A stretch of DNA of 64,000 bases from Mytilus californianus (GCF_021869535.1 NW_026262701.1:31558001-31622000); one strand, 5' to 3'; shown: positions 1 through 59,002, numbered from the stretch's first letter. Notes: a model not told the origin generated them from the sequence alone. Numbers and translations: made by a program.

Positions 1-585
1 TTTTTAATTTGAGTGAATACTATGCGTCTTGGAAGAAAGAAAACGAAATGGGTTCTATAACTCTGCGGTTACCTGTTCAAAGTTAAAGGTCACTTCAGTA
101 ACCAAACGAAATAAACGTTGTCTCTTTATCGTATTATTGAATTATAATATCCATTGATATCTAATTAAACATAATAAATTTTACTTATGTTCATCACTGA
201 AAGTTTCTTGAGATGGAAACTATTACTGGTACTGAAATAAGTTTCCACCACCTTAACTGTCTTTAATGTATCAATTATGTAAGAGACCTTTTTCTCAGTA
301 TGAATAGACTTTTTCGTGGTAAATTCTATTGTGGTTTGTTTTCGTTGTATTGTTAAACTATAATCACTACATCTTTGTATTGATAATAGTACATTTTACT
401 GGGATTGCTATTGTTTTTGAACGAAAAGAACAATGAACACATATCAATGTATCCGTAAAAAGGGGAGACGATACCTAGGGGATATTCAAATATTCTCATC
501 TTTGAAAATTGAATGAAAACGATACTTTATGATCCTTTTTGTCAAGATAGATTTGCAAATGTCCTTTATACTTATTCTATTATAG

Positions 586-717
586 ATGCCAATTAGAGTA
601 TATGTACCAATAGTTTCTCATGACAAAACTCTTGTTCCGGTATTGAAATATAATATAAACGGAAAGAAATGGCGAACAGGGCAGAGATTACCAGAAGTAC
701 AACTTGATGACGTTTAT
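586..717 (+). CDS. Copy 1 exon E (ZU5-1, MPIRVYVPIVSHD...KW)
   Basis: tatag| acceptor and |gtaag donor; 132 nt, same length as homologues at 29220-29351 and 55190-55321. Confidence 0.85.
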
Positions 718-3700
718 GTAAGTTAATCCATATTTCTCGGAATAGCGGGTGGTCTAGAATGCTATTTGTATATTGCAAAAGGTATATATGGAAAAAAGAA
801 TTATGGCATCAATATATAGAAGAGGCTGTCAATGTGTAACAGAACTGATGATCAAACCATCTGGAAATCTGTTAATCTCCTCCTGCTGTAATTTTTAGTT
901 GGTAAGATAAATATCAAATTCATCTTTTAATTCGAGCACAACACAGATATATGCATATCTCATTAGCAGGCTTATGACCAGAAAAGTAAATTTAACACTT
1001 GTCGCTTAACTTAAAACATCCCTTTAACCTATCATTCAAGCATTATAAATACTAATCAGCCAGCGAATGATTCCCAACAATGAATGAAAATTGACGTTTC
1101 AAGTAGAAAATATATACGGTTAAAAGAATAACAATTTCTCTTCAGGGTATCTCATTTGTTGGCGTAGAAATTCCGTTGACACAACTGAAACAACTGCAGT
1201 GTGTAGCAGTAGCTAGACATCCAAGAGATGAAACGGAGGTAGATGAAGGTGGTAAAGAGTTTGAACCAGAGGGTGATAGAAACATTAAACTAAAATTTCC
1301 TCCTGCAGCATTTCCTGGAATAACAACCGTTGCAACAGTGGTATTTTAAAGTTATCTTCAGATATATAAAAACAATCAGGCAAAAATGGCAGTTTTAATA
1401 CATTTAGGGATAACCTCTTTCTTTCTTGTTAGCAAGGCTATTTTTATTTCTAAATTCTGATATAATGTCTGCAAAATTTTCTATTTTATTCTATCGTTTG
1501 AACAATGTAAATATGCGCGCATAGGACGGACGTATCTTGTCTTTCTGGTCTTTTTTTTATCTCGCTCTTGAAAATGTCATTTTATCTTCAACTTATATTT
1601 TTTTGCATATTTGTTCCTTACATTCTAATAAATGATTACAGACTGTGCCTTGGACTCAAAATGACATCATAAATGCGTCGAAAAGACACAGAGAGTTGGA
1701 AAATATGAAAATAGCAGGTTCTTATATCAACATCTCGTGTGAAAATTCAACAAATGCAGATTCTGACCTTGAGATTTACAACCTTGGATGGGAAGGTAAG
1801 TCTTTAATTAATCCATTTAACACCAACAGTTAGAATTCAAATCATAGATTTCTTTTAAAAATTAACCACGAATGAGTGTCTGTTTAAATGAAATTGCTAT
1901 TCCATACTCTTTTTTTTTCAATAATTCTTATTGATTATTCGACAATAATCGACAGAGAATTAGTCTGTATGACGGGTCTATGTTGACGACGTTTTTGTAG
2001 ACATCTATCGCAAATAGACACTATTAAGTTTCACTGTGCTTTTATAGAGAGTTATCAAAAGTTTCATCAAGTGGATACACACCACTTTCGATTTAAGTAT
2101 TTTTTATTCGACACCGACGGTATTTATGATCACTTGTTCCAGAATCAAGCTTCATGTTAGCATGTTTTATCGTGTGATGAGAACTTGTTCACAGTTAAAC
2201 ATGTTTTCAAAATGTGCCTTCCTTGAATGAATTTACAGTGAATAAAAGTATTGGTAAAAGACATACCTTGAACCGCGAGACCCTGAGCAGATGTAGCAGG
2301 TGGATAGTTAACAACATGAATCCTGATGACATGGCTCTGCACTTAGATGATATGTTTGAGAGCGATTTTGCTGAAGAGCTAATGGTAGGCTGGTTTTGTT
2401 TCTTTTAAACAATTGTAGCAAAATGTTTTTAAATTGCGTAATCTTGATAATTTGAATAAATAAAGGCAACAGTAATATACCGCTGTTCAATAAATCGATA
2501 AAGCGAAAACAAATCCGGGTTACAAATTAAAACCGAGGGAAACACATTAACTATAAGAGGTAAACAACGGAACAACAGAAACACTGAACTGCAACAACAA
2601 CAAACGCCAACATACATAGAAACGCACTATTTGAAAACAACTGTAATATAACATTATCGTATTAAGATTAAGACGTTTCGATTTGGAAAAAAATATTTTA
2701 AATACCGGGTTTCAGTTTTTCGGTTAATTCTTTGTCAGTTTTATGCTCTCTGACATGTAGTAATTTCGGCTCTCTAAATCAATTGAAATTAGTTCTATCA
2801 AAACTTTTGATTTTTCAACCCTGTATATCACCATTCCCCATGTGAAATTAAAATATCGTCTAAAAGAAATAATCCACAATGCTTTTCAACATATAATGGT
2901 AGCATACGCTATACATTTATTACCTTGGGATACCATACGGCATATTTTGTTAATAGCAAACAAAAAGGTAAAACATGCTACACAGAGGAACAATTTTCCC
3001 CACCTTATTAGTAGCAATATACCAACTTCACCTGCATATGGGATATACATTTCTAACTCATTCGGTATTCAAGAGCTTGCAGCTGCTACTCAGACTTTAT
3101 AACACGTCACCAGTGTCTGAGCAAAAAGTTGATGAACCAGGGTAATGTCAAAGAACGTCTCGTCCTTTTTCAAAAAAAGTTCATCTGAAGATACCAAGAC
3201 CTTGTTGATAAATATTCTGTATTAACTTCACAAATAATACACGTTGGTCTTGAAGTAAAGATTATAGGTACTAACGTTGTTTATCATCTTAATTATGTGT
3301 TATAGTGTTCTTTTATTTGTCTTTGTAAATTATTACATTTACTGTTTAGTCTATTTTTGGTAATATCCATTTGATGTAGCTCGGTACTTATACGTCCCGT
3401 CATTGTGTTATTGTGCTATGATAAATTTTTGTCTTTCGTTTTCGTTTATATGCCTTTTTGTTTTTTTGTTTTTTGACATATTTGTTTGTTTTTATAGTGA
3501 TTAAGATTATAACACAATGTTAGCTGCTGTACCCCTATTTTTTACATTTTTACCTATTATGTCTGTTTGTTTTGTTCACACATTGTTGTCAATATAATGG
3601 AATTTTATACGACTGTCATACAAGTGAGAGGTTTAGCTAGCTATAAAACCAGGTTTAATCCACAGTTTTCTACATCAGAAAATGTCTGTACCAAGTCAAG

Positions 3701-6700
3701 AATATGACTATTGGTTTCCATTCGTTTGATGTCTTTGAGCTTTTGATTTTGCCATTTGATTAGGGACTTTCCGTTTTGAATTTTCCTCAGAGTTCGGTAT
3801 TTTTGTTATTTTACCTTTGACCTTAAGTCTGGTCATTCAATAGTATTTTAGAATCATGTGTCGTATAGACGGAAATTGGTATCATAATTGTTTACCACGA
3901 TTAACGATAGCAAGATTTTCTAATAGAAAAATTCATTATTATTCCTCTTAGAACCGATTTTGTACAATTTGTGTAAATACAGTTGCGTCTTGAAAGTTTG
4001 TTTTTATCTTCTATTGATTTAAGATTGTTACCTTTACAGACAAAAAATACACAAGGAGATAAGAATAGACACATTTTATATGAATTAATGGAATCAGATG
4101 ATGCCAGTATTGACACTTTCGTCGAAAATTTAAGTTCTTCACAACCAAATGTAGCAGACAAAATCATTGCTGTGAAGTCAAAAGTACAAAGTTCCAGAAA
4201 ATCCAAAGATTCAAAATACGATTTCAATTTTGCAAGTGACTTTGATCCAGGTAAACTAGCAGTTTTGACTGAGTATTTATTTTAACTAGTAGCGGGAAAT
4301 GGGAATATATCTAAAAAAAACTTTCAAATTGGACGATAATATCGAAAACGAATTTGAAATCGAACAGTACAATACGTACCAATTTAGTTAACAACAAATG
4401 CACCTAAGAAAAGCATGCAAATATAACACAAGACATATTGCCAAGAAGCTCGGATTTATAGCGTTAAAAGACACTCTGACCTAGTCGAGTGCAATTGGTT
4501 CATTCTTTTTAGTTGGTTTATTTTTGTAACGTCATGTTTAAATCAAAATGAATCTATGCTTAGTAAGCAGGTTTCTTTCCTAGGTTTACGTCAATTCAAC
4601 CTGAACAATTTATATTTTAACAAGTAGCGATTTCTTGATGAAAGGCTATTTTAATAAAAACAAATACACGGAAACGAAGAATTGACCCTGGGAAGAAATA
4701 AGTTTTACTATTAACTTTGAATAATTTCTAAACAGATTTCGAAAAGAAAGAGGGAATAGTTTATATGGTTTCCAAAGTCAGTGGCAAATCATGGGAAATA
4801 GCACCAATAGAAGAAACTGATGCTCATCCAAAAGCAAGATTCCTAAAACTTCCTGCTGGGAACAACAATTTTCAGTAAGTTGACACTTAATTAGAAACCT
4901 AATTCTAGACAATCACATTAGATAATAAATTTGGAACTTTCAATCCATATATACATTATCGATGATTTTATATTTATGTTTTATTTAGATTTATATTTTG
5001 CATACATCGCAACCCTGAAAAGCTGGGAAAAAGATGTTAACCACTTTGTACACACCAGATCTTTGATATGTATAACTTTGGCACAATCGAGTTTGGAAAT
5101 CTATTTTGTAGATTTTACATTTACAGATATTCGTATTTCTTTTTTCATTTGAAATGTATTATACTTTTAAAATTATTGAGGTGCTTATTAGTTTCAATAT
5201 TTAATAATTCAATACATGTATTTTCATCAATAAAATATTTTGCATTTATAGGGTACTGGGTCTGGTTGTTCCATTTGAGATGAAAGATGAAGTTATCTGT
5301 AAAACAGCTGAAATTCTAGAAAGTTTGAATTGTGTCACTAAGGTGTCACTGATATGTCGTCAAAAGCACGCAGATCCTCATGATGCTGTTATTCAGTGTG
5401 TCCGGACAGAAAATATAGCTGGTACTCTTCATCATTTGGATGCTTTAGGATATACAGATGGTCCACCGGAAAGCTCAGAGTTTGGGGTTGTTGATGGAGA
5501 AGAAATTGAAGTACAATACGAATCTAATTTGTATTTCGAGTATTATCAATATTCTACCTTGAAGATGAAATTTTACAGCAATCTTTCTGTCGAAAGATAT
5601 TCAGGAAATCTCCTAGTCCTTAACAAAGGCGACCAAGCCGAAGACGATAAATATCACGGACATTTTTCCTACAGTGTACTCCCTGGTCGGTTGTCCATTC
5701 CAAGGCAAGGAACATTTGTCTTATATGTGCCAAAGGTATGCATATCAGAAAATGTGAAACAAAATTCAGACAATATAAAACATAAACGAAACATACTTAT
5801 GTATATATATTCATGATTGAATATAAAACAACATGAACAATGTAAACAAAGTAAATGCACCGTACTATTTATAGTGTACCGTTCAGCGATCCTGCGAGAA
5901 TCACCAAGCTGACGTTATTCCTGTAATATACATTGTCGAACGTAATTTCTTCCAATGCATTGATTAATAGTTCATTAGTGATATTAAAACGGTAAAAGAA
6001 ACTCGACAATACATTCAGGGTAGGAAAATATTGTTCTAGTTCATTCTGAAATAGATGTTAACATGAGCGAATTGTTAAAACAACATAATGTATTTACAGC
6101 ACGTACATTTTTTTCTGACATTTTCTCAATATGTAACCATAAAGGACCAAAAGTATAGCCACATCTGCACAATAAATCGGAGCTATGCATGAAGGAGATA
6201 TATTCGTTAATTTCAAATAATTTCAACTGTAAATAACATACCAAAACACTAGAAGAGATGTATGATTAAACGAGAAAGACATGTAATAAATATAAAAAGA
6301 AGATGTGGTTTGATTGCCAATGAGACAACTCTCAACAATAGACCAAATGACACAGAAATTAACAACTATAGGTCACTGTACGGCCTTCAAAAATGAGCAA
6401 AGCCAATGCCGCATCGTCAGCTATAAAGGGCCTCGAAATGACAAATGTTTAACAATTCAATAAAGCATGTCTGTGCCATTTTATTCTTTAAAATACATTT
6501 TATTATCTTTTAACACATTTCCAGAAAGTTGGTAAAAGTTGGTAGATGTATTTAAGACAATGTGAATATGTACTCACTCTCTCTGTAAAGTATTTGATAG
6601 ATATGTAGAATATTTTGGATCATTTTTCACACAGGTATTGCGTTCATGCTTAGTTGGTATACTGTTCATGTATATATTATGTATGTTACAATACAGTAGT

Positions 6701-9694
6701 GTTTGTTTGTATCTGTACTATTTTTTTTTTAATTTAATCCAATTATAATCATTTTGTATGTTTTATAAAAAGATATCATAACCCAAAAGTGCATTTACTA
6801 TAAAGTAATTATTTTCAGCCTTTAGAAGAAAACGTCACCAACTTTCCTTATACATTGGGTGTGCCAGGTATGCTTGTCCCATATAACACAAAAAACTGTG
6901 ATAAAAAAGTGGAATACAATATCAAATCAACTCTAAAGGATAGATTTTGTATGCTACAAATAAATGGAAGTTTAATTACTGTGACTTTTATTACTTTTCT
7001 CTCTCTCTGACACCATAGATGCACAATATAATCAACAAGGGGGGCACAATACAAAGTTCCCGAAGGTCAGCAGATACTTATTTTTTTTTTAATTTCTCTG
7101 ATTGAGGAACAAAGGAAGTAAAGAAGACAGTTAGGAAAGATATACAGCCAATAGTTCAATATTGTGTTAGTTCAGTGTTCCCAGATTAGAAGCTTTTACA
7201 CGCAATGCTAAACAAAAGTAAAATTTTGTTATTAGTTTCAAAATATTGTTTCCATTATTTAAGTTTTCCACTAAAATATGACTTTCATGAATAGTACTTT
7301 ACACTGTGAAATGGCTTCCACTGGGTTCATGAACTGTATTATTTTTTTTTCCAAGAAAATAGTTCAATATAAAATTGAGAATGGAAATGGGGAATGTGTC
7401 AAAGAGACAACAACCCGACCACAGAACAGACAACAGCAGAAGGCCACCAATAGGTCTCCAATGCAGCGAGAAATTCCCGATGTTAATTTTCTAAACGTAC
7501 ATGTACATCCATCAGTTTTGTTTCCTTTTTTTATACGGATACATTTACATTTTATCTTTGAAGAATATTACATGTTTTTGGCTACGTCGGTGCCGTCTTA
7601 ATACAGAACACACGAACAGCAATAATCAGCGTGACACAGTTTTCTTTGTAAATACAAATTTTAAGTAATTTATAACGATTTCTTAAAATATTTCAGTCAA
7701 GGCATTGGCAAAGTTTATTGCTTGGCAAATTACTTGTACCAATTCTAATTCAACAAAATGGGTATGTCTTGGCAAAAATCTAACAGATGGGGACACACAG
7801 CTATATCATCAAATATTGGAAAATGTGAAAGAGCAACGGGATAATGCAGAAGAACGTGAACGTTGTGAATTGTACATTTTGTATTGGTCCAACCACCATG
7901 CACCAGATGTTACTGACAAGGTATAACGGAAACAAAAATACTTACTAAGAAACTAGTACCTCAGAAATGAAAGTGCAGAATGTTATTATATAATAAAGTG
8001 TATATGAAATGGATTTTTCAATATCAGGAGAGAGCTGTTTGATTTGTATGGGGGAGATATTAATGTGTCATTTGATATAATCTACATATTTACTGGCAAT
8101 ATCAACATGATCAACATTTGTTTTCTTTATGTGCTAGGTCAAATCTTAATTCATTTGGTTATTTGCTGTTCTTAACATTTTTGTTGATTGTATTTGATAT
8201 GTATTGCAAAAACCCGAGGGTTCCTGCTCTATCAACGACGTCCATCGAGTTGCTAATTCTAAAACCAAATAAGTGACACTCTGTCATTAGGAGTCTTAAT
8301 AAAGACTTTCTGTAATTTCGAAATGGTTTGAATGATGAGATGCAAGGAATGGTAAACGCCAATAAAAGTATACATGTATAATTAAATTCAAAAATTGCAA
8401 GCTTACTTAAGTACGACACGTCAGTTAAGGTGTCCTCCAAACTGGTTAGGATTATATTTTGATTATTCCTCAAATGCAACGTGTTGCTTACGTATGTTAT
8501 TTGTTTTTATTATAAAGATAGCGAAGATAATAGCTGCTCATCGTCATACACAGTTAGAAGCAGAAGCAAAGCAATTCATAAAACCTTTCATTCCAGGCAG
8601 AGGTAAAAACTAAATTGAAATAGTATTTATTTGAGTATCTTTAATTTAAATGAGTGTGCAGTTTGATCATGATTTTATAATGAAGTATGGGGACAATAGG
8701 TTTTTGTGGCAAATGAAGGCCCTGAATGGGCATTCTATAATTACCACTGAGCAAGCAACAACCAGTCAACATTAAGACACAACTTAAATCGTTTCAAAGA
8801 TTAATATCTAATTATTAACGTAACGCTCTGTTTAACGTCTTCCGTTTAACTTATATTTAGGCAACAGCAATTTATCGACGTTAAAAAAAGGGTTAAGAAG
8901 AGAAACCAAGGTAACAAGCAAAAATTGAAGGTGTCGCATGAACTCCAACAGGAGCGATACCGAATGCAGCAACAGGGTAAGCATCTCCTGTTATGCATGC
9001 ATCACCCGCTGGGCGAATCCACAATCAGTCGAAATGTTACAATAGAGAATAGGACACATTTTACGATTACATATATATATATATATATATTTGACGACTT
9101 TTCTGGTTTCTAAATTCGATATTGGTAAATGTGTTCTCTACAAGAAAATATATTATTAAAAGTCATTAGAAGCGCTTAGTTGGGTAAACTTGACATGGTT
9201 GAACAAAATAATACTCCCTTGCAGTCATTTAAACCAAAATAAACTATAACATGTATAACCATGAAATGTATATGTTGTTGGATTTAATTAACAATAAAAG
9301 TGTCTTTTAAATTAGTTAACAATGTTGTGAAGAACATTATGTGGGATAAAAATAATTCTTATTTTACATCAAATCATTGTAAAAATATGCTACTGCACGT
9401 TATATATATTTTTTAGGAATTTTATCAAATGATAACCTGGAAAAGATGGCTTATGTTTTAGCAAAGGATTGGGAAGTTTTTGCAAAGAAACTAGGGTTTT
9501 CGAGTGATGATATTAACAAAATAAAATCGAACCAACCTGGTGAAGTAAGACGTACACTAAGAGTGCTAGATCTCTGGCGGCTGTCAGATGGCGCTATTCA
9601 AAAGGGAACAGAGTTGGTAAAGAGTTTGCACCAAGCTGCAAGGGCAGCTCAATGTGGTGCAAAGTTACTAAGCATGATTTCTGAAGATCTATAA
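586..9694 (+). CDS. Copy 1: PIDD1/DTHD1-like ZU5-ZU5(CARD insert)-UPA-DD-DD gene, 5'-partial, 11 exons, about 698 aa in window
   Basis: Exons 586-717, 1146-1340, 1642-1795, 2239-2384, 4040-4250, 4736-4874, 5252-5735, 6819-6867, 7697-7920, 8518-8602, 9417-9694. All junctions are GT-AG, phases join into one open frame (2097 nt) ending in TAA, and homologous exons recur twice downstream. Confidence 0.9.
1146..1340 (+). CDS. Copy 1 exon F (end of ZU5-1, start of ZU5-2: GGKEFEPEGDRNIKLKFPPAAF)
   Basis: ZU5 N-terminal motif GG..(x)..v.l.FPP.AF; 195 nt, same as 58808-59002. Confidence 0.9.
1642..1795 (+). CDS. Copy 1 exon G (ZU5-2 core)
   Basis: TVPWTQNDIINASKRH...YNLGWE; ttacag| and |gtaag; 154 nt, same as 59922-60075. 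Confidence 0.9.
2239..2384 (+). CDS. Copy 1 exon H (CARD, first half)
   Basis: ETLSRCSRWIVNNMNPDDMALHLDDMFESDFAEELM matches the CARD helix 1-3 pattern; 146 nt, same as 60290-60435. Confidence 0.85.
2993..3815 (+). mobile_element. 5'-truncated Penelope-like retroelement (Naiad/Chlamys-type RT C-terminus plus tail) in the CARD intron
   Basis: With frameshifts reads PHL.SNIPTSPAYGIYISQLIR..RAC..YSDF..RHQCLSKKLMNQG..KERL. Confidence 0.75.
4040..4250 (+). CDS. Copy 1 exon I (CARD, second half, plus linker)
   Basis: TKNTQGDKNRHILYELMESDDASIDTFVENLSSSQPNVADKI matches the CARD helix 4-6 pattern (T..dk.r.lL..l......f..F...L...qp.lad.l). Confidence 0.85.
4736..4874 (+). CDS. Copy 1 exon J (C-terminal strands of ZU5-2)
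   Basis: DFEKKEGIVYMVSKVSGKSWEIAP...ARFLKLP; aacag| and |gtaag; homologue at 63882-64000. Confidence 0.85.
5252..5735 (+). CDS. Copy 1 exon K (UPA domain)
   Basis: LDALGYTDGPPESSEFGVVDGEEIEV...KFYSNL...YHGHFSY resembles the PIDD1 UPA pattern (GPEPSDTVEMFEGE..FYS..RGQVSF, recalled from memory). Confidence 0.85.
6819..6867 (+). CDS. Copy 1 exon L (49-nt linker)
   Basis: ttttcag|CCT...CCAG|gtatg; the phase 0 to 1 change is needed to join K to M. Confidence 0.7.
7697..7920 (+). CDS. Copy 1 exon M (death domain 1, helices 1-5)
   Basis: ALAKFIAWQI...KWVCLGKNL...ERCELYILYW has the DD pattern l..ia..l...W..L...L ... l..W. Confidence 0.8.
8518..8602 (+). CDS. Copy 1 exon N (end of DD1 and linker)
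   Basis: IAKIIAAHRHTQLEAEAKQFIKPFIPGR; 85 nt, same as 40605-40689. Confidence 0.8.
9417..9694 (+). CDS. Copy 1 exon O (death domain 2, terminal exon)
   Basis: LEKMAYVLAKDWEVFAKKLGFSSDDINKIK...LRVLDLW is a canonical death domain; TAA stop at 9692-9694. Confidence 0.92.
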
Positions 9695-28469: not shown

Positions 28470-31400
28470 GTAAGTTCGCCTTATTTGCTTTCTCTTTCTG
28501 AAATATTTATGGTCATATAGCAGTTCATTTAAAATGTTCATTTAAACAGTTTCTAATATATAGCAATTCCTAATTCATTACATACAATATCATCAATTTG
28601 TATGAAGATAAAGATATATGACAACGAAAAAGCTTCTAATTGACAATAAAACATCGAATGACATAAACATATTGTTTTCAGATGTATACAAATTTATACA
28701 CAATATGTCAAGCTGTAAATATCACCGATTCTAGAAAATTCACTACGAAAACTATATATAATTGGTGATATACACATTTCGTCCATTTATTAAGATATCA
28801 CAATTAAAGACGAAACAAAGTCTGCCAGGAAATCTGCTGTGTTATTTTTACAATGCCTGATGGAACTCAGAACAGCGATTTTGCCAAAGCTATGACTCTG
28901 TTGAAGACCTCGATAAATGTTTGAAAACCTATGACGAAACGAAAACTTATATCCCCTGTTATCACAATCCAGCCACAGAAGAGCAAAGAGACTATGTTAT
29001 GCAATTAACATTGTGCAATTAAGATGTAACAATTCCGATTTTTGGTTGTTAGTCTTAACAAACATTTTTAATATTGACTGCATCGCAAAGATTTATATTG
29101 ATTAATTCCAATAGGTAAAATTATGATCAGTATTTCAATGCGTAAATTATAACATATTAATTACATATATAATGTTATAAATTTATGTACTGACAAATAA
29201 CATTTTGTTTACATTTTAGTTGCCAATGCGAGTGTATGTTCCAATAGTATCGCATTATGGTAACCTTTTACCAACACTGAAGTTCTCAATCAAAGGTCAG
29301 AAATGGAGATCAGGAAAATCACTTCCAGAAATTACACTGCCAAATGTACAGGTTAGTAAAATAAAGATTACTTGAAGTAGTTATAATAGTACATTAAAAA
29401 TAAATCCGCGCTTTGTTTATCATTTCAAATAACTTTTCGTTTATTAATTACCAGAATGTTTCTTTGTTTAATGTTGTTTTTGAAACTATGGTCATACATG
29501 TTATATTCAAGTGTAATTATGCGAAGAAATTGTAGTTAATTGATATAGGTAACCTTAAGGTATCTTACATTGTCACTGTAACATATTCTCTTGTTAGCTT
29601 CCAGCAATTGAACTGCAAAGATACTCACCATGGTCGATTTAAAGAACGATGTCAATCGAGATTTCGATCTCAGGATTGATTTAATCATTGACTTAATCTA
29701 GTCATGCATCTTCAATAAGAATAAGAAAAGTTAAAGAATACACGTAAAGATTTTTGACTCGACATCATTTTTACGTGTCAGGGAAGCTGATATTTTTCTA
29801 TTATATAACTGTTCCATCAAAGAAAGGAAAATGATAATAATAAGTAGTTGTTCTCAGTTTAAGGAAATCTTTACAACAGAACGTAATTGTTTAAAGTAAG
29901 ATCAATTAAACAGCAACAACACACAAAAAAACAAACATTTAGACATGAGCAAAATGTCTTCAACAAAAGAAAAATATCCTTAAGATTTGTCAAGATTTAA
30001 ATGAACTCGATACTAAACAACTATGAACAGATTTTACAGACACTAATAAAGATCTGCCCTAAACATTCATTTTTGTTAACGACAAAAGTATTAAGATCTC
30101 AAACTTCCCACTAACAGGAACATAATTGTTCACCTATATGTATTTGTTTTATTTTTTGCTACCCTTTTCTATTTATATTGGTCAGTGGATTAAGAAAATA
30201 TACACCTGTATTGTCAAATTGAACTAAATTAGCATGCAAGGTTAAGAATTAATGGTTTTATCTAATTACAGAAGATTTTCTTAAACCGTTACGTTGATCA
30301 ATAGAAATTATCTTACATAGAATATGAAAAAAGAATTTTTTTTTACCACATAGCGTAGTCATATCAATTACAAAAATTCTGAAATAACAAAAAAAAATTG
30401 GCCAATGACTATTTCATGTGATAAACTAAATATATTTTTGAAAATATTCCTTTCATATTGAGCTGCAATCGAAATGATAAAGTAACTCTTCATAATAAAA
30501 GAAACTAATAAAATATTTGCAAAGTGAACGTACTGATATTGTTCTAAATAGTAATTATGCGCTTTCTCTGTATTTTTTGCTCATTGAATTATCTCCACAG
30601 TAATTTTTATTTCGACTTTGAGAATGAACGGACTAGTCGGTTCCTCTGTTAAATTTTTTTTTAGTAATTTCTTTTAATATGAATATTTTGATATTAAGTT
30701 CAAAGGTTCATCAATGGTTAGGCTGTGAAAAGCAATTCTAACAAATCATTTTCTTACGTGCATTGTAATCTAATAAGTTAACCGACATTTTTACCAAAAT
30801 TTGGTACAGAGATATCATTTTGTGTAACTTATCAACCGTGTATGTGTTATCGCTGCAAATAATACTTTCCTAAACGACACTTCGTGAATGTCAGTTTACG
30901 CGACTTACCAAAAAGCAGATTTAGACACGTCAGGTGCATTATATCCCGTTACTCCCCTAGCAGCTGGTGACTAGTTATCATAGTATAAAACATTAAATAA
31001 TTTGTGTTCATTCCAGTTCAATAATACCCACTTCGTTAGCACTATTTGTGTTTGCGTTATCTCTCACTTTCAAAATCGCACATAATTTTTTTTTTTTTTT
31101 GGGGAAAAAGCTAAAGTGTATTATAATTGTGATACATATTTCTTCATGAAAAAAAAATTGTAGTTTTGATTGGAAGTAAATTGTACGGGTTATTGTTATG
31201 ATTATTTAGTATTATATTAATGTATGCAAATCAAATATATATATTTAAAGAAACTTGTGCTGGATGAAAATACATTTTTTTTCGATTTTTCAAGTCTCCA
31301 ATTTCATCACAGGAACTGGAGAATCAAACATTTGACGCCTCGTTAAACGGCAACTGAATTCACCGATAAACATATCAATTCCATAAATACATTTTAGATA

Positions 31401-31620
31401 ATTAGAAACGTTACTTAGATGACTGTTTTGTATTGTGGACATTAATTTGGAGAAATTAAATGAATTTAGAAATGTAATCAATAATATCAACAAAAGTATC
31501 CATTTCACTTTGGAATATAGCGATAGACAGATACACAATTACCGTTTAATGATACATACATATAATGATGGTATCCGTATTTTGCGTTTTATAACATTGT
31601 TGTTATAATTCTAAAACTAG

Positions 31621-31795
31621 GATGTTTGCTTTGTTGGAGTGGAAATGCCCATTAAGCAATTGGAGAACATGCAGTGTGTTGCTGTTGCAAGACATAAACG
31701 TCATGAAACTACAGTTGACGAGAGAGGAAAAGTTTTTGAACTAAAGATTGACAGCAATATGAAAGTCAAGTCGAAAAACTATTGTTGCAACAAAG
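31621..31795 (+). pseudogene. Copy 2 exon F with 20-nt deletion removing FPxxAFxG
   Basis: 175 nt versus 195 nt in copies 1 and 3. Confidence 0.85.
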
Positions 31796-34244
31796 GTATA
31801 TATTGTGAAAGCTATCTTACTAATATAACATGACAAAGTTGGGAAAGCAATGTTGCTGAAATGGAATATATATGTATGCATTATAAGAATATTGCAGCTG
31901 CACAATAACAATTTCGACAAAGCTACATATAAAAAAGATCAAACATAAGTATAAAAACGAGCATAAAAACAATGACAGTATAAGATATAAGTCATAGTTT
32001 AATCATATATTCAAAAAAAAGAGTTGGATAATACTATTGGGATATTCCAAAGGTATGAAAAGTTGTCGACTCATCTTCTCTATCGTCAATTAAGATAATT
32101 TTTAAAATAGTATTTTTTTCATAATTTTAGTAATGCCTTTCATACACCCCGTTCAACCAACGTTTACTTAGTTTAGCTTTATTTAGATAGAATTATGTAT
32201 GTATTGGAAGCTATGCTGCATTTAAACGTTTTAACTTCAAGATCTACAATGATTAAATACATAGATTATATGAAACATATCAATAAATGTAATGAATAGA
32301 CATTAGAGGCTGCGACAAATATTTTCTCACCTTTTTGGGGATTTCTAGAAATGTTTAACATTCGACAAAACTTTCAGTATGAGTGATCAAAAACATGAAA
32401 AAACACTACGGTTTTTGCAGTGTGAGGCCGTCACGACACTATGATAATTTTGACATTGTGAACATATATATCCGGACATCACATTAACCAAACTTTACAA
32501 TACTAATGAATTCAATGAAGAATTATGCCAGACAATGGGATAAACACGAAAATAGAGACGTGAATGTGTTAAGGCTGTGAGGTCGTTAATCCAAATAAAA
32601 TGATAGGTCTATGAACACACATGCTACATTCATCTTCAAAGACACAAACGTGGCTTTAAACTTCTGTTACCTGCATAACAAATATGGTGCTGTCCTCGTA
32701 TATAAAGCCCCGAATAACAGTATTTTTATGAGTACATCAAATTACATAAACTGATGGATAACGGAATAAGTATTGATTTTTCACTTTGGAATTCAACATA
32801 TACGCCAACGAGACTTATAAATAAGATAATTTTTAACAATCATAGGTCTGTTATATGTACCTTTGGAATTTGTATCAGAAATGAATACTAACTTGATCTT
32901 CATTCACTGTACTGGATATCAAAATTGCAAAGGTTGCCTTTGGTTTACTTTTACAAATTGTGACTTGGATGGAGAGTTGTCTCATTGGCACTCATACCAC
33001 ATCTTCTTATATCTATTACAAGCAAAGTTAAAGTGTAGGGTCTGTCAAGTGCCCTACAACACCGGGCCTCAGAGTTACTGTGAAAATCCCTTCTCTATAG
33101 TCGGTGTTGACCAGATGTTTGTCATGAAAAATAGGCTTCTCTACTAAATCAGATGTTGCTTATGTGAAATTCGAAAGATATGTAACAGTACATACAATCT
33201 AAGTATTATTCCTATTGCAATGGTATAAATATGTAGGCATCTGAACCGCGATGGTACTCCGTGTTGGTCACGCTAAAAAAGGTTAGACTCTGAAGTGTGT
33301 TTTTTATCATTTTGAAGTGCGGTGGTGGCATTGTGTCGCTATCTTGTTGATAGCTACGAGGAAGTGAGTTGGTGATAACGATGAAGTGTGATGGATTACA
33401 TAAACAACATTTTTACTATGTTTTTCACGTTCATTTGTCAATGTACAAGATAATTTTTTGTTAGAGGAGGCTTTTCAGGTTGCTACGTAAATCATCGAGA
33501 GTATGCAGGACGATCTCTCATTTAGTATGAAAGGACATACATAATATGAAATATTGTCTTATTTTGTGTTGCAAACACCGTTTAAAAAGATGAAACTTTA
33601 GTATAAGCAAAGTACTGACATATGATAATTAAACATATATCATTTTGTCATTTAATCCTAATTAGCATGGTAAACAGGCTAATTACAGGTAATCATTCTT
33701 TTAACGATTCGATTATTTCAATCATTCATATCATCGATAACAAAATGCCATAGATTTTTATTGATAACAATGAAATCAAATTTCATCTAAGTAATAAAAA
33801 ATCTACTTTTTAATATAATTACACATCTGCATGTAGATTTTTAGCTAGCTATCACGCGTCATATAGACCATAGCATATCAGCTAAAGGACCATCACACTC
33901 TGACGAAAACCATCGTCCTTCAGCATAACCATAATCCTACATTTCATTAAAAACAGCTAATTACCTGTTTTATATTGCCAAATCGATGTCAAGACTGATG
34001 AATACATGCAAACATATAAAAACTTCTATTATCGTGTATGTTATAGTTACCAAATTAAAAAGTGTTGGGAATGTATAGATACTGTGCTTTCGAGTGAAAT
34101 TTAGTCCATCCTATGGTGTATCTACACATAGCCAATCACTTTTTTTTTTTGGTAAATGACATGTGTCAAAGTTCACAACTGATATCACGTGATGAAAAGT
34201 ACTTTTCCCGCTGCATTATTAATCTGCGGGTTTCATTCGTCTGA

Positions 34245-35045
34245 AATGGCTGCAAAAATGGAGGTCTGTGACATTGACTTTTTAAACTTTTTCTACAACA
34301 GTAAACTTTTCGGGCTCAGAGGAGTGGACGATCATCGGAACTTCTGTCCGTGGACTTGTTCGAACTTGGAAATGATCAGACGGGAAGCTATATTTTATTC
34401 AAGGGCAGAGCCAACAAAACGTACTATGGTAAGTGTCATTTTTCTTACAATTTTGTAGTATTTGTGCTTTTATTGTGTATTTCAATTGGTTCTTTTGTGT
34501 ATTTGGGTCATTAACACTTGACTGACGGTTTTCAGAAAATCCAGGTGTCTTCGTCGAGGTCCGCGCTACAACAGGTGCTTCTTTTATGGAAAACAATAAG
34601 GTAAACACGGGTATATTGTGTCGTGTGACGGTGTGTATGCTTATTACATTTTACCCAATCCAGGCCAAATAAAATTGTTTTATATTTCAATAATCAGTTT
34701 TGTTCAATGTATGATTTTTATGTCACTGAATGTCAATACTTAATTTTTTTTCAGGTGGACTCAAATCAGTGGAACTTCAGTGCCCAAATCCTAAAACACT
34801 ACCTTCAAAACCCTGTACTTTTCAAGAAATATCACGGAACAGTATTTGAATATTGTACGTGATCTGAATGGGACAGCCATTTACAAGAGACCTCTAGATT
34901 AAGGACGTACATGTAAAGTTTGGTGAACAGTCAGTAGGCGTTTTCAAAGTATCTAATATCATGAAAACGGAAAATCGTGAACCATCAAATAGTGCTAGAG
35001 GAGGCTTTGGAAGTTTGTTGACTGGATGCATGTTCAATTCTAATA
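34245..35045 (+). pseudogene. Decayed unidentified intron-containing gene nested in the copy-2 F-G intron
   Basis: Donor GTAAGT at 34429, acceptor 34535/6, donor 34601, acceptor 34754/5; a frame is continuous across both introns but needs frameshifts elsewhere. Confidence 0.45.
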
Positions 35046-35914
35046 ATGGAAGTTAATTACAATGTATATGAGTGATTGATTCAGTATTTGTGGATTATGT
35101 TGAATGGTTTTGGTGTCTTTCATTCAAAGGAATGTTTTTATAATGGAATTATGTGCACCTTTTTTTTTGTAGTGAATTTGTTTGCATTATGGAATCATGT
35201 GCATCTTTTTTGGTAGGATTCGAGGATTTATATGTGTGTCGTTCAGTCTCACATTTTTTTTTAAAAATACTACAGTTATTAAAATTCATTGTTATACTTA
35301 TTATATGAAAAAGAAAGGATACGGGGTATTCACCAATGAGACAATTACCCAACACTTTACTTTTAGGGTTGAAAAATATTCCAGGAAAAAAAATGTGTTA
35401 CATTGTAGTTTCTGGCTAAAAGTGTAAGGTATCTAACATATACCACAGGGCCATTTTCAAGCAACTGGTAAACCAATCAGAGGGCAGACATGGAACTGTG
35501 GTGTATGTGTAGATACCCTCATACTTTTTCAACTGAAAATCAAACAAACTATGGTACATTTGCTGATAGTGATACACATAATTAACCATGAATGTAAGCG
35601 ACATATATTTATAGACATATATATTGTGTGTTGCATGTGTATAAAAGGAGATTTCCCAAGATAAACAACGTTAGATCGTTCATTCTTTGAAATCATCAGC
35701 TGATTTTGGTAAAGTTACTGTCACAGACGGAAACATTGTACAAAAACCATATAAACATGTTTGCTGTCCCTGTTATTTATTAAATTTCTTTTGAATGATA
35801 TAATTATTATTTCCTGAAGCTGCTTATTCATTTATTCTTGTGAGACAACGCTGGACAAAGGTATTTTGTACATCGAAAATTACGGATTGAAATCTAAAAA
35901 CTATTTTTGTCTTT

Positions 35915-36280
35915 CAGATTGGGAACAGTTATAACAACCGTTATGGAGAATCTGTGCGACAGATGACCACAAATGTAATCATATTGCCGTAGCCACAATT
36001 CCATCTTTCTCTCTTCGATCGCGACATTACCGAATCAGACTTATCATATGGTTTATACTTGCTTTATCAACACGTAGGGTGTCATATGGGGAGCATCTGA
36101 ATTCACGCCGGGTTTTTGTGAGATTCGTCTTGATCGGTTTTTAGTTTTATATGTAGTGTTTTGTGAACTTGTGAACTTGCTCGTCTTTTCGTCGTATTTC
36201 GGTTTTTTGGGGGGTTTTTTTTGCCATGGCATTGTCAGGTTTTCTTTGACTTTTGAATACCTTCTTAGTATCTTCCGCCT
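35915..36280 (+). mobile_element. Penelope-like 3' tail remnant
   Basis: RYGESV.QMTT-like ORF end plus tail; related pieces at 14700-14930, 26350-26680 and 62290-62520 (minus strand). Confidence 0.55.
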
Positions 36281-37859
36281 TTTTAACTTCTACTAACAAA
36301 ATGAATCCGATGATGCCATACAAGATTGATCTCAGTAACACAGATGCTTATAGCAGTATGATGGCATGTTTTATACAAAAGGGTAAGGTTGTCGGGAAAG
36401 CAAATTTAAGGTGTGGAAAGAATAATTTTTATTACTTTTTATGTGCATTTTATAAATTTTTTAAATTTGTTTGGACATTCAGATACAGTTCAACTAGTTT
36501 AAAATAAATACAAAATTAAATGAAAATCCGAAATTCTGACCGGCCCCTCTGCTTTAAAATGTAAAAACTATTGACAATATTATTATTTCGAACAAAATAA
36601 ATTTCACTGAAGTACAAGGAGTTTGCAGGATTCTTAATTTCATCTGTACATATTTTAGTAAAGGAGGGAGATTTTATAGGTGTAAAAACTCATAAAAGAT
36701 ACCAGGCTTATAATTTGGTACGCTAGACAGCGTTTCGTCTACACAAGGTTTATCCATGGCACTCGAATCAAAACAGTTAAAAGGCTTAATCAAAAGCAAA
36801 ATTAAATAGCATTGAAAACAAACAATTTCGAAAACTTATACAAAACGATTAAAGCTGTCTAATCCTTGTGGTAGGAATACATCAGTGTTTACAATAGTTC
36901 AACATTTAATAAACTGTAAGTTTAAAGGAAATAAGTATTTCAATGATGTTTCATGTAATAAACAAAACATGACGATGCTCTCAAGAACGAAGAGTTAAAC
37001 AGCAGATCCGTCGACCCAGTTGTTGTAAAAACTCCCCAAGGCTAGGCTAATAACTTGGTACGCCTGATGCGAGTTTCATCAAACAGAGGACTCATCAACG
37101 GGGTTCAAATTAAAATAATTGGAAGGTCAAATCAAGTCGATGCTAAAGTAAAACGAAAACCGAAAATTCCCAATAGTTGTGTCAACAACAGTTTAGGCTG
37201 TCTATGTCATGAGATAGAAAAACCTCATTGTTTCCAGTAATTTAACATTTCTCATATTAGTAACACAAACGAGCTGACTATTGGCTGGTGACATCGACCC
37301 AGTTGTTGTAAGAACTCATCAATGATACCAAAAGAGACGACAATATAAAAAATACTAGGAAATTGTAATTTACAGAAACGGCACTTTTATAGTACATCAT
37401 GAACTATTTTTCGTTGAGGTTTTTAACTGTGCAATGTACTAACAATTTGAGGGAAAATAATAATACGTTTCTTTTTATAACTCTCTTGTATATCAGCAGC
37501 TTCGTTATGTTTTAGGAAGATTTTCATATAAAAATTTGATAATTCATTTTCTAAGAACTACTTTATTACGCAAAACAACATTTTTGTTATAAGATCCATT
37601 TTTATTTTTGTATAATGCTTTGCATTGTATTTAATCAAACAATAATTGCTTAATCAAGTTAAATTTGTGTTGCTGAAAGCAGTTCCATGGACTCATGCCG
37701 ACATAAAAAATGCACCAAAGAAGCACAAGGAGTTGCAAAATATTAAAACAGCCTGTTCCTATAAATATTATAGATATATCATGCGAACATTCAACAAAGG
37801 CAGATTCAGATTCAGAGATGTATGATTTTGGGTGGGTTGGTAAGTTTTTTATGAATATA

Positions 37860-38053
37860 NNNNNNNNNNNNNNNNNNNNNNNNNNNNNNNNNNNNNNNNN
37901 NNNNNNNNNNNNNNNNNNNNNNNNNNNNNNNNNNNNNNNNNNNNNNNNNNNNNNNNNNNNNNNNNNNNNNNNNNNNNNNNNNNNNNNNNNNNNNNNNNNN
38001 NNNNNNNNNNNNNNNNNNNNNNNNNNNNNNNNNNNNNNNNNNNNNNNNNNNNN
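37860..38053. other. Assembly gap (194 N)
   Basis: Run of N; true size unknown. Confidence 1.
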
Positions 38054-40874: not shown

Positions 40875-41501
40875 ACGTCAGAGTACCCAAATTGCACCGA
40901 GTACCCAAATTTCACCTATTCAGCAAAAATAGCAGCGGGAATCTTACAAGTTTCCCTTGAGACTAAACAATTTGTATTTTCATGATTTGACATTATACAC
41001 GTCTTTCAACATAGGTAGGCTATATTTGAATATACACAAAACGTTCACAGTATCTTTCAATAGATGATGTATTCACGAGAAAAAGTAAAATCTACGGAAC
41101 GTCGCCATGGTCCACAAATAGTCATCCTTTAAAAATGGGCAAATAAAATATGTTACAAGCATCCATTTCTTTAAATATGAAAAGTAAACATGGACTACTG
41201 TCAAATTGTTCTAAATATTTGAAGAAATAAAACAAAACATCTGTTATTCGATTTTTAAGGATGTGAATTTAAGCATGGATGCAATTTGTGTACTCCTCAT
41301 TACAGAGTCATGGGTCGTTTGGAGGTTGGTTCAAACCCATTTTTCTATGATTCAAGATGGATTCAAAATTAAATTAGTGTAACTATATAGTAAATAAGGA
41401 TACATCTACAAAATAAACACAGAATGGAAACTTTTGTCTGGATCATAAATAAACGTAGGTGAAAAAAAGTCAAAATAGGTGCAATTTGGGTACCCTCACG
41501 T
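40875..41501. mobile_element. MITE with ~25-bp TIRs (Tc1/mariner-pogo-like)
   Basis: ACGTCAGAGTACCCAAATTGCACC matches the reverse complement of GGTGCAATTTGGGTACCCTCACGT; TA-like flanks. Confidence 0.7.
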
Positions 41502-41869
41502 AATATGATAAACAAAAGAGGCATTAAAGTCGAAAGCAACTTATGTTTACAACTTTTTAAACGCTCAATGACTTAATTCACTGTGTTTAAAATACTGAAG
41601 TGTTTTGTTTTTTATTAAATATGTATGGACTTTAAGGCTATAGTCGACAGATAGTCTTTGTAATTACCAATAACATATGTTGTTATAAATCAAAATATGG
41701 TATTATCTTAATATTATTTTATGCTATTTCCAACGACGTAACAGCATAATACACATTGAAATGACAATATAATGATCAATTTTTTAACTCGGTTTTCATA
41801 CAAATATAATCATAGTAGAAGGTATCTTTTTATTTTTCACTATGAACGTATTTTTTAATGAATTTGTTG

Positions 41870-42150
41870 GAATATTTTCCAACGATACCTTAGAGAGAAT
41901 GTCATTTGCAATAGCTGGTGAGTGGGAATCTATGGCGAAGAGACTTGGTTTTACCAATGATGAAATAAATCAAATCAAAGATAGTCAACCGGGAGCAGTC
42001 AGACAGACACTAAAAATGTTAGATTTATGGCGACTGTCAGATAGCGCGATAGCCTCAGGAACAGATCTTGTGAAAACTTTCCATGAAACAGCAAAATCAG
42101 CGCAGTGTGGAGCAAAATTGCTAACCTGTATCTCTAAACATGCAAACTGA
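41870..42150 (+). pseudogene. Copy 2 exon O (death domain 2)
   Basis: Open frame homologous to 9417-9694, but preceded by ...GTTG instead of ...AG. Confidence 0.88.
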
Positions 42151-55189: not shown

Positions 55190-55321
55190 TTACCTATGCG
55201 AGTGTATGTACCAATAGTATCACATGATGAGAGCCTTCAACCAACACTGAAGTTCTCAATTAAAGGTTCGAAATGGAAAACTGGAAACCCACTTCCAGAC
55301 ATACAACTGCCACAAATGCAA
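55190..55321 (+). CDS. Copy 3 exon E (ZU5-1)
   Basis: LPMRVYVPIVSHD...KW; 132 nt. Confidence 0.85.
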
Positions 55322-58807: not shown

Positions 58808-59002
58808 GATGTTTCCTTCGTTGGAGTAGAAATACCCATTAATGAATTAGAGAACATCCAGTGTGTTGCTGTTGCTCGACATAAACTTCATGAAACTGAA
58901 GTCGACGAAGAAGGAAAAGTTGTTGAACCAGTCGTTGACAGAAATATCAAAGTCAAGTTTCCACAGAGAGCGTTTGCAGGAAAAACTATTGTTGCTACAA
59001 AG
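58808..59002 (+). CDS. Copy 3 exon F
   Basis: DVSFVGVEIP...NIKVKFPQRAF; 195 nt, open. Confidence 0.88.

What the first reader, a model, noticed from the sequence alone, without database searches (positions are those of the whole stretch)
2239..4250. CARD nested inside ZU5-2 as a symmetric phase 1-1, frame-neutral two-exon cassette
Seen: exon G ends in phase 1 and exon I ends in phase 1; H+I = 357 nt (360 nt in copy 3), both multiples of 3. The flanking exons G and J carry the N- and C-terminal strands of one ZU5 (…DLEIYNL… before, …IVYMVSK…W… after), so by alignment to PIDD1 ZU5-2 (from memory) the CARD sits in the variable loop between them. Established: symmetric 1-1 modules are the signature of exon shuffling. 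Inference: the CARD was shuffled into a ZU5 loop, and skipping H+I would give an in-frame CARD-less isoform (…GWE-D-FEKK…), a possible on/off switch for caspase recruitment.
Basis: partly seen in the sequence, partly recalled or inferred. Interest (0 to 1): 0.82.

Follow-up and report, generated by a model that had tools for sequence, protein, structure and literature searches.

The report
CARD domain spliced into a ZU5 loop
A California mussel gene for a ZU5-ZU5-UPA-death-domain scaffold carries a caspase-recruitment domain (CARD) inside a loop of its second ZU5 domain, encoded by a two-exon, frame-neutral cassette that sits where CARD-less relatives have a single phase-1 intron, which makes it a clean and apparently undescribed case of domain-in-domain exon shuffling.

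Summary
Exons H (2239-2384, 146 nt) and I (4040-4250, 211 nt) are real. Transcript contigs from three studies splice them G-H-I-J at GT..AG sites. Together they are 357 nt and lie between two phase-1 introns.

The gene is Mytilus californianus LOC127700211 (XP_052059590.1), 100% identical to the spliced exons.

An AlphaFold model (pLDDT 83.6) shows the two flanks forming one ZU5 sandwich (ankyrin-B ZU5, Z 13.7-13.9). The insert forms a CARD (caspase-9 CARD, Z 11.3, rmsd 1.8 Å). The whole protein is ZU5-ZU5(CARD)-UPA-DD-DD, closest to the ankyrin-B ZU5-ZU5-UPA-DD tandem (E 3e-17).

CARD-less relatives in Sinanodonta, Mercenaria and Lingula keep one phase-1 intron at the same loop. Scallop relatives have the same two-exon 1-1 cassette. 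On a tree built without the cassette, CARD-bearing genes fall on one side of a single branch. This supports exon shuffling into an old intron.

The isoform switch is only partly supported. NCBI annotates a M. galloprovincialis isoform that lacks exactly these 119 residues, but I saw no G-J junction in M. californianus.

Window copies 2 and 3 are pseudogene-like.

The scan's other note on this stretch gives the same architecture.

The parts
586..717 (+). Coding exon, C-terminal strands of ZU5-1 (P0057 residues 182-225)
   Evidence: Transcript contigs in X1 and X5, joint 717>1146; 100% tblastn match to P0057
1146..1340 (+). Coding exon, end of ZU5-1 and first strands of ZU5-2 (P0057 226-290); both flanking introns are phase 0
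   Evidence: Joints 717>1146 and 1340>1642 in three runs
1642..1795 (+). Exon G: N-terminal half of ZU5-2 up to the strand ...DLEIY... (P0057 291-341); ends in phase 1
   Evidence: strand at model residues 87-92
1796..2238 (+). Phase-1 intron, upstream half of the ancestral ZU5-loop intron
   Evidence: GT..AG joint in X1, X5, X18
2239..2384 (+). Exon H: short linker plus CARD helices 1a, 1b, 2, 3 (P0057 342-390); 146 nt; enters in phase 1, ends in phase 0
2385..4039 (+). Phase-0 intron inside the CARD, after helix 3. It is filled with high-copy repeats. The intron is at the same CARD position in the Pecten maximus homologue.
   Evidence: Joint 2384>4040; depth in the thousands over 2350-3960; repeat families D7, D10; Pecten exon map
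4040..4250 (+). Exon I: CARD helices 4-6 plus a roughly 23-residue low-confidence linker (P0057 391-461); 211 nt; ends in phase 1
4251..4735 (+). Phase-1 intron, downstream half of the ancestral ZU5-loop intron; the split codon G|AT is the same as in CARD-less relatives
   Evidence: Joint 4250>4736
4736..4874 (+). Exon J: C-terminal ZU5-2 strands (IVYMVSKV, then invariant Trp, P0057 W480); ends in phase 2
5252..5735 (+). Exon K: last ZU5-2 strand (NFQ in place of the HFS motif) and the UPA domain (P0057 507-668)
   Evidence: Joint 4874>5252 in X1 and X18
6816..9691 (+). Remaining 3' coding exons, limits approximate from tblastn: about 6816-6866, 7687-7923 (first death-fold domain), 8539-8604, 9401-9691 (terminal Death domain)
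   Evidence: Pfam Death E 3.5e-09 on 9383-9691; two six-helix bundles in the full model
29220..42147 (+). Copy 2, a degenerate paralogue. G 37673-37856 has a frameshift, the exon H position lies under the N run 37860-38053, I 38085-38290 has a frameshift, J and K were not found, and the DD exon is at 41863-42147.
   Evidence: it does not match any annotated protein at 95% or more
55190..64000 (+). Copy 3, a pseudogene-like paralogue. G ends at 60075, H 60290-60435, I 61103-61316 (360 nt, still open), J starts at 63882 with an in-frame TAA at 63977-63979 and W>R. There is a further stop in exon K beyond the window.

Best explanation
Exons H and I of Mytilus californianus LOC127700211 encode a complete CARD with flexible linkers on both sides. 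The CARD is inserted into a surface loop of the second ZU5 domain of a ZU5-ZU5-UPA-DD-DD scaffold protein.

The cassette was inserted by exon shuffling into an older phase-1 intron that interrupts this ZU5 loop. The insertion happened before mussels (Mytilida) and scallops (Pectinida) diverged. The old intron was thereby split into the two phase-1 introns now flanking H+I. Because the cassette is 1-1 symmetric, the ZU5 reading frame and fold were preserved.

Shown: exon structure and constitutive inclusion in three transcript assemblies; the one-ZU5-plus-CARD fold at model level; the intron in CARD-less relatives; the same cassette in scallops.

Inferred: the protein works as a death-fold signalling hub. 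Its C-terminal death domains would contact DD partners and its internal CARD would recruit a CARD-bearing caspase or adaptor directly, doing in one chain what PIDD1 plus RAIDD do in two. Occasional skipping of H+I would then give a CARD-less variant that folds but cannot signal.
For: Exons and junctions. Identity with XP_052059590.1.

Fold:
- Model of P0057:245-525 has pLDDT 83.6 and pTM 0.82. Strands lie at 9-92 and 224-269, helices at 108-211.
- VIA-align gives Z 13.9 and 13.7 to ankyrin-B ZU5 across model 4..281, and Z about 10 to the single ZU5-ANK domain across 8..269.
- It gives Z 11.3, rmsd 1.8 Å over 89 residues to caspase-9 CARD. Nearly every helical match in the top 50 is a natural CARD; one row is a de novo designed protein.
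- Helix 1 is broken into two (108-115 and 117-123), as in CARDs.

Sequence:
- Pfam CARD matches 6 of 15 cassette homologues, best E 6.7e-6.
- The Pecten homologue matches CARD at E 1.2e-4.
- A cassette profile against PDB sequences returns many CARDs at E 0.03-1.6.

Whole protein: Foldseek E 3e-17 to the ankyrin-B ZU5-ZU5-UPA-DD tandem and 6e-6 to UNC5b.

Relatives without the insert have only 11-36 residues at that point. They carry a phase-1 intron there: Sinanodonta P0034 and P0045, Mercenaria P0032 and Lingula P0041.

The Pecten cassette is two exons of 164+169 = 333 nt, phase 1-1, with an internal phase-0 intron at the same CARD position.

In a tree built on non-cassette columns, the CARD+ rows form one side of a branch (support 94/90), so one change suffices.

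Skipped isoform: M. galloprovincialis X3 equals X1 minus exactly 119 residues.
Against: The P0057 cassette itself scores below Pfam's CARD gathering threshold (15.2 bits against 23.9). Pfam ZU5 does not match the flanks at all. Both domain calls therefore rest mainly on a predicted structure built from a shallow alignment of 25 sequences.

No donor CARD gene was found. In the species' own genome the cassette matches only the tandem cluster of this family.

The tree has 20 rows, long branches and no firm root. One loss instead of one gain is not formally excluded.

No binding partner, caspase or otherwise, was tested.

No G-J junction was seen in M. californianus.
Confidence: 0.8

Rival explanations
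1. The cassette is a regulated alternative-splicing switch. Inclusion gives a caspase-recruiting scaffold and skipping of H+I gives a CARD-less decoy, with the ratio set by tissue or immune state.
For: Skipping is frame-neutral. NCBI annotates exactly this product for the M. galloprovincialis orthologue, plus an H-only-skipped form (X2). CARD-less relatives show that the ZU5 tolerates a short loop of 11-16 residues there.
Against: All three transcript contigs across the region include H and I, and no 1795>4736 joint was listed. None of the three annotated M. californianus isoforms skips the cassette; they differ at the N terminus and at the terminal DD. The X2 form, with H skipped and the frame broken, suggests some of this is splicing noise. 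The support behind the Gnomon model could not be inspected, and contigs hide minor isoforms.
Confidence: 0.25
2. The nested CARD is ancestral to this bivalve/brachiopod family, and the CARD-less genes lost exons H+I by precise deletion. The shared phase-1 intron would then be what remains after the loss.
For: One change on the tree fits loss as well as gain when the root is unknown. A 1-1 cassette can be deleted without breaking the frame.
Against: The CARD-less state is found in Lingula (a brachiopod outgroup), Unionida and Venerida. The solved ZU5 domains of ankyrins and UNC5b align without such an insert. CARD+ genes were found only in Mytilida and Pectinida. Gain is therefore the more parsimonious reading.
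Confidence: 0.1
3. The helical insert is a generic death-fold or helical bundle that arose by expansion of the ZU5 loop. On this reading it is not a true CARD and has no caspase-recruiting role.
For: Sequence scores are weak (Pfam 15.2 bits; PDB profile E 0.03 or worse). The tool itself warns that Z below about 13 for helical bundles can reflect a common arrangement.
Against: Nearly every helical match in the top 50 is a CARD; one is a de novo design and none is a DD, DED or PYD. Rmsd is 1.8-2.2 Å over the full domain, and helix 1 is kinked. Independent Pfam CARD hits occur in 6 of 15 homologues. A two-exon module with its own conserved internal intron is not what loop expansion would give.
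Confidence: 0.07

Closest known systems
Ankyrin-B/-R/-G ZU5-ZU5-UPA-DD tandem (PDB 4d8o, 3ud1, 6m3q)
   Same: Same order of folds: ZU5, ZU5, UPA, death domain. It is the best structural match of the whole model (E 3e-17) and of the ZU5 that hosts the insert (Z 13.7-13.9).
   Different: Ankyrins have no CARD in the second ZU5, have one DD rather than two, and carry ankyrin repeats at the N terminus. The mussel protein has a charged coiled-coil N terminus instead. Sequence identity is about 8-12%.
PIDD1 (LRR-ZU5-ZU5-UPA-DD) with RAIDD/CRADD (CARD-DD) in the PIDDosome
   Same: Both are ZU5-ZU5-UPA-DD death-fold scaffolds. Functionally, a DD platform is coupled to a CARD that recruits an initiator caspase (established knowledge; reviewed in PMC9162469).
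   Different: Here the CARD is in the same chain, inside ZU5-2. There are no LRRs. The HFS autocleavage motif at the ZU5-2/UPA junction reads NFQ. Orthology to PIDD1 was not shown.
NLRP1 and CARD8 FIIND-CARD (ZU5-UPA-CARD)
   Same: These combine a ZU5-UPA module with a CARD in one protein for caspase activation (PMC3210808, PMC7794386). There is a weak structural match to the rat NLRP1 FIIND (7crw_A, E 8e-3).
   Different: In NLRP1 and CARD8 the CARD follows the UPA at the C terminus and is released by autoproteolysis at SF|S. Here the CARD is nested in a ZU5 loop, the nucleophilic serine is absent, and two DDs follow the UPA.
Classical phase 1-1 exon-shuffled modules (Patthy's rule; EGF, kringle and similar modules)
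   Same: A symmetric 1-1 module inserted into a phase-1 intron of the recipient, preserving the frame (established knowledge).
   Different: The classical cases are mostly extracellular modules added between domains. Here an intracellular death-fold module of two exons lands inside another domain's fold.

Membership tests
CARD (death-fold superfamily, Pfam PF00619) | Sequence match to the family profile above the curated threshold | tested here: inconclusive
   P0057:342-461 scores 15.2 bits, E 0.022, covering profile positions 3-82 of 85, against a gathering score of 23.9. Six of 15 homologous cassettes match, best E 6.7e-6. The Pecten homologue scores 22.5 bits.
CARD (death-fold superfamily, Pfam PF00619) | Six-helix antiparallel bundle with helix 1 kinked into H1a/H1b, superposing on solved CARDs better than on DD, DED or PYD | tested here: met
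   Model helices 108-115 and 117-123, then four or five more. Caspase-9 CARD Z 11.3, rmsd 1.8 Å over 89 residues; Apaf-1 CARD Z 10.6. Nearly all helical hits in the top 50 are CARDs, apart from one de novo design. This is model-level evidence only.
CARD (death-fold superfamily, Pfam PF00619) | Homotypic CARD-CARD binding or filament formation with a caspase or adaptor | not tested
   No partner was identified and no complex prediction was run.
ZU5 domain (Pfam PF00791) | Sequence match to the family profile | tested here: not met
   No ZU5 hit on P0057, on P0057:230-345 or on P0057:455-680 at E up to 1. Only the Lingula relative has a weak ZU5 hit.
ZU5 domain (Pfam PF00791) | Beta-sandwich fold superposing on solved ZU5 domains, with strands from both sides of the insert in one domain | tested here: met
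   Z 13.9/13.7, rmsd 2.7-2.8 Å over 138-141 residues to ankyrin-B ZU5 across model 4..281. Z about 10 to single-domain ZU5-ANK chains across model 8..269. The tryptophan P0057 W480 is invariant in 25 of 25 aligned sequences, including CARD-less ones.
ZU5-UPA-DD supramodule proteins (ankyrin, UNC5, PIDD) | ZU5 followed by UPA and a C-terminal death domain | tested here: met
   The full model matches 4d8o at E 3e-17 and UNC5b 3g5b at E 6e-6. Pfam Death matches at residues 795-863, E 6.7e-8.
Autoprocessing ZU5/FIIND proteins (PIDD1, NLRP1, CARD8, UNC5CL) | H/S-F-S motif with a nucleophilic serine at the end of the ZU5 | tested here: not met
   The ZU5-2/UPA junction reads N-F-Q in P0057 and has no serine at that position in any aligned family member. 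The ZU5-1/ZU5-2 junction reads L-Q-C.
Exon-shuffled module (Patthy's phase-compatibility rule) | Module bounded by introns of the same phase, with length a multiple of 3 | tested here: met
   Phase 1-1 with 357 nt here, 360 nt in copy 3 and 333 nt in Pecten.
Exon-shuffled module (Patthy's phase-compatibility rule) | The recipient lineage has an intron of the same phase at the insertion point | tested here: met
   Phase-1 intron at the homologous loop in Sinanodonta (two genes), Mercenaria and Lingula. The codon is split G|AT, as in the mussel exon J, in the Sinanodonta and Mercenaria genes, and G|CC in Lingula.
Exon-shuffled module (Patthy's phase-compatibility rule) | An identifiable donor gene with the module bounded by the same intron phases | tested here: not met
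   A six-frame search of the species' own genome with the cassette finds only the tandem cluster of this family on one chromosome. The Atlas feature search gave no usable hit.

The most novel reading that the evidence does not exclude
In pteriomorph bivalves a ZU5-ZU5-UPA-DD scaffold acquired its own CARD inside a ZU5 loop, which would make it a single-chain PIDDosome-like platform. The cell would tune it by including or skipping the frame-neutral H+I cassette. The CARD-less isoform would act as a dominant-negative decoy, and the ZU5/UPA/DD supramodule would mask or expose the tethered CARD.
Probability: 0.2. Interest if true: 0.78.

Novelty: new variant of a known kind. Interest (0 to 1): 0.62.

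Why it matters
Domain-in-domain insertions are rare among death-fold signalling proteins. I found no paper describing a CARD nested in a ZU5 (four full-text searches; two papers read). The genes themselves are annotated only as uncharacterized.

The case is unusually complete for exon shuffling. The recipient's phase-1 intron survives in outgroups, and the module keeps its own internal intron across mussels and scallops. The insertion also preserves the host fold in the model.

Functionally it suggests that bivalves, whose apoptosis and innate-immune gene families are greatly expanded, fused the platform role (PIDD-like) and the adaptor role (RAIDD-like) into one chain. That gives a directly testable handle on how initiator caspases are recruited in molluscs.

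Tried and rejected
- **Pfam on single exons**: only the terminal Death domain hit. CARD and ZU5 are invisible exon by exon.
- **Word search with exon K**: this returned only exon-sized fragments because of the length filter. The best one (P0001) lies on a genomic contig, not a transcript contig. I therefore used the representative search, which gave the full-length relatives.
- **Raw-read RNA run X21**: zero depth on all exons, with about 6% of the run read, so it says nothing about junction frequencies.
- **G-J junction**: no 1795>4736 joint was listed. Contigs drop minor isoforms and 15 joints were not shown, so this is not evidence of absence.
- **Protein Atlas feature search with the CARD**: no usable hit.
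- **Donor search in the species' own genome**: only family members in the tandem cluster matched.
- **Copies 2 and 3 as the annotated neighbours** LOC127700210 or LOC127700212: rejected, since identity is only about 86%.
- **Model without the cassette**: I did not type spliced sequences into any tool; all protein work used P0057 and other stored ids.
- **N run 37860-38053**: not filled or looked up.
- **Complex prediction**: not run, because no partner is claimed.


Full report
**What is in the window**

The window is AT-rich animal DNA (GC about 0.32). It holds three tandem paralogues of one gene on the + strand.

I read exon limits for copy 1 from the sequence and tested them with public runs. 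Assembled transcript contigs from three runs in three different studies (X1, X5, X18) each cross the region. They show GT..AG joints at 717>1146, 1340>1642, 1795>2239, 2384>4040 and 4250>4736; X1 and X18 also show 4874>5252.

This gives the following exons:
- G 1642-1795
- H 2239-2384 (146 nt)
- I 4040-4250 (211 nt)
- J 4736-4874
- K 5252-5735

H+I is 357 nt. G and I both end in phase 1. The intron inside the cassette is phase 0. Intron phases along this stretch are 0,0,1,0,1,2,0, so the symmetry is not a property of the whole gene.

**Which gene**

Single exons gave no Pfam signal except the terminal Death domain. A word search with exon K found only fragments. The representative search with exon K found full-length relatives.

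A second word search and local BLAST showed that the spliced copy-1 translation is 100% identical over 487 residues to P0057. P0057 is XP_052059590.1, [quoted passage not shown], 879 aa. The cassette is P0057 residues 342-461. The window is at chromosome-scale contig C121:31558001-31622000 of that genome.

**Is the insert a CARD?**

- By sequence the signal is weak but consistent.
  - The P0057 cassette matches Pfam CARD over nearly the whole profile, but at 15.2 bits, below the gathering score.
  - Six of 15 homologous cassettes match, best E 6.7e-6.
  - The Pecten maximus homologue matches at E 1.2e-4.
  - A profile of the 15 cassettes against PDB sequences returns CED-3, CARD8, ICEBERG, RAIDD, caspase-9, NLRC4 and ASC CARDs at E 0.03-1.6.
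- By structure the signal is clear.
  - An AlphaFold model of P0057:245-525 (25-sequence alignment, pLDDT 83.6, pTM 0.82) has a helical bundle at model residues 108-200 with helix 1 broken in two.
  - VIA-align gives Z 11.3, rmsd 1.8 Å over 89 residues to caspase-9 CARD, and Z 10-10.6 to Apaf-1 CARD.
  - Nearly every helical hit in the top 50 is a natural CARD; one row is a de novo designed protein.
- The CARD core is P0057 350-438. It is tethered by a short low-confidence linker on the N side and about 23 low-confidence residues on the C side, all inside H+I.

**Is it nested in one ZU5?**

Yes, at model level. Strands from exon G (and the exon before it) and from exons J and K superpose together on single ZU5 domains:
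- Ankyrin-B ZU5 in 6m3q and 4d8o: Z 13.9 and 13.7, 138-141 residues aligned across model 4..281.
- Isolated ZU5-ANK chains of 150 residues: Z about 10 across model 8..269.

Pfam's ZU5 profile does not see these flanks, so the assignment is structural.

The tryptophan just after (P0057 W480) is the only invariant column in the 25-sequence alignment, CARD-less members included.

A second model of P0057:118-879 (pLDDT 84.5) shows ZU5, ZU5 with the CARD, UPA, and two six-helix bundles. Its best PDB match is the ankyrin-B ZU5-ZU5-UPA-DD tandem (E 3e-17), followed by UNC5b (E 6e-6). This agrees with the scan's other first-reader note on the stretch.

**Relatives with and without the cassette**

Local BLAST and MAFFT show two classes of relative.
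- The first class is colinear through the cassette. It includes all Mytilus paralogues, Pecten maximus P0037 and Argopecten irradians P0047.
- The second class has the two ZU5 halves joined by only 11-36 residues. It includes Sinanodonta woodiana P0034 and P0045, Mercenaria mercenaria P0032 and Lingula anatina P0041.

I fetched the genomic loci of the CARD-less genes and mapped their exons. All four have a phase-1 intron exactly at that short linker. In the Sinanodonta and Mercenaria genes the G-like exon is 51 codons long, as in the mussel. The following exon starts with the split codon G|AT in three of the four genes, as mussel exon J does (G|CC in Lingula).

The Pecten gene has the same two-exon cassette: 164+169 = 333 nt, phase 1-1, with an internal phase-0 intron at the same CARD position. 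A divergent M. coruscus paralogue has it too.

A maximum-likelihood tree on non-cassette columns (20 rows) puts all 16 CARD+ rows on one side of a branch (support 94/90), so one change explains the distribution. With a brachiopod, a unionid and a venerid lacking the insert, and solved ZU5 domains lacking it, a single gain before the mussel-scallop split is the simplest reading. The tree is small, has long branches and is unrooted, so loss is not excluded.

A two-exon module with a conserved internal intron argues for DNA-level shuffling and against retroposition. No donor was found. In the M. californianus genome the cassette matches only about ten copies in a 720-kb tandem cluster of this family.

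**The isoform claim**

The 90% cluster of P0057 contains three NCBI isoforms of the M. galloprovincialis orthologue LOC143080263. Isoform X3 (XP_076112118.1, 477 aa) equals X1 (596 aa) minus exactly the 119 cassette residues and reads ...LGWE|DFEKK.... Isoform X2 joins G to I, which breaks the frame and restarts from an ATG in another frame of G.

The M. californianus isoforms X1-X3 all retain the cassette and differ elsewhere. In my single read-laying run only the inclusion path appeared in contigs, and the raw-read run had no reads on the gene. Skipping is therefore plausible and annotated in a sister species, but its frequency and any regulatory meaning are unknown.

**Mechanism**

Shown: a transcribed, intact gene for a ZU5-ZU5(CARD)-UPA-DD-DD protein with a charged coiled-coil N terminus.

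Inferred from what ZU5-UPA-DD proteins and CARDs do elsewhere: it is a death-fold hub whose DDs engage DD partners and whose CARD recruits a CARD caspase or adaptor. That would merge the PIDD1 and RAIDD roles in one chain.

It is not a demonstrated PIDD1 orthologue. It has no LRRs, and the autocleavage motif at the ZU5-2/UPA junction reads NFQ with no serine in any family member.

**Other copies in the window**

Copy 2 has frameshifts in G and I and no J or K. Its exon H position lies under the N run, which I left alone.

Copy 3 keeps an open 360-nt cassette. It has TAA in J at 63977-63979, W>R at the invariant tryptophan, and a second stop in exon K just beyond the window.

Neither copy matches an annotated protein closely. 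They are decaying paralogues and are weak as independent witnesses.

**Novelty**

Four full-text searches and two papers read turned up ZU5-UPA-CARD (NLRP1, CARD8) and ZU5-ZU5-UPA-DD (PIDD1, ankyrins), but no CARD nested in a ZU5. The library is incomplete, so this is absence of evidence only. I rate the finding a new variant of a known kind.

Noticed in passing
window 2385-4039: The intron between exons H and I is packed with high-copy repeats. Contig depth reaches thousands to tens of thousands over 2350-3960 in all runs. Parts recur in the window (2451-2619 at 13426 and 18874; 3571-3818 at 15014, and inverted near 61550-61820). These are probably SINE- or MITE-like elements that are transcribed, or embedded in many transcripts.
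   Followed up: partly
window 11741-13198: A tandem satellite of about nine copies of a 166-bp unit (81-100% identical, varying with the repeat block) lies between copy 1 and copy 2. Its frames give repeated open ORFs (VPRWRPSWMMDRLQSNN...).
   Followed up: no
window 37860-38053: A run of 194 N sits exactly where exon H of copy 2 would be expected, between G (ends about 37838) and I (starts about 38085). It was left as it is.
   Followed up: no
window 1146-1340 (P0057 about 241-249): The junction between ZU5-1 and ZU5-2 reads L-Q-C-V-A-V-A-R, with a cysteine at the position of the nucleophilic serine of the PIDD1 HFS motif. The Q-C is conserved in the Mytilus paralogues. Whether it supports any autoprocessing is unknown.
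   Followed up: no
window 27611-28541 and 51597-52120: Lys/Glu-rich coiled-coil exons with 25-31-nt internal repeats form the N-terminal parts of copies 2 and 3. They match the charged N terminus of P0057 (residues about 50-105), whose own exons lie upstream of the window.
   Followed up: partly
G000:C121:30987001-31704347: The family forms a tandem array of about ten cassette-bearing copies over roughly 720 kb, all on the + strand. At least two further copies carry in-frame stops in exon I (near 31081011 and 31634595). Two pairs (31131577/31132337 and 31453215/31453975) give identical scores, which suggests a recent segmental duplication or an assembly duplicate.
   Followed up: partly
P0067 (LOC127700211 isoform X2) versus window 8539-9691: One annotated M. 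californianus isoform replaces the terminal Death domain with a short alternative C terminus. The documented alternative splicing in this species therefore removes a DD, not the CARD.
   Followed up: no
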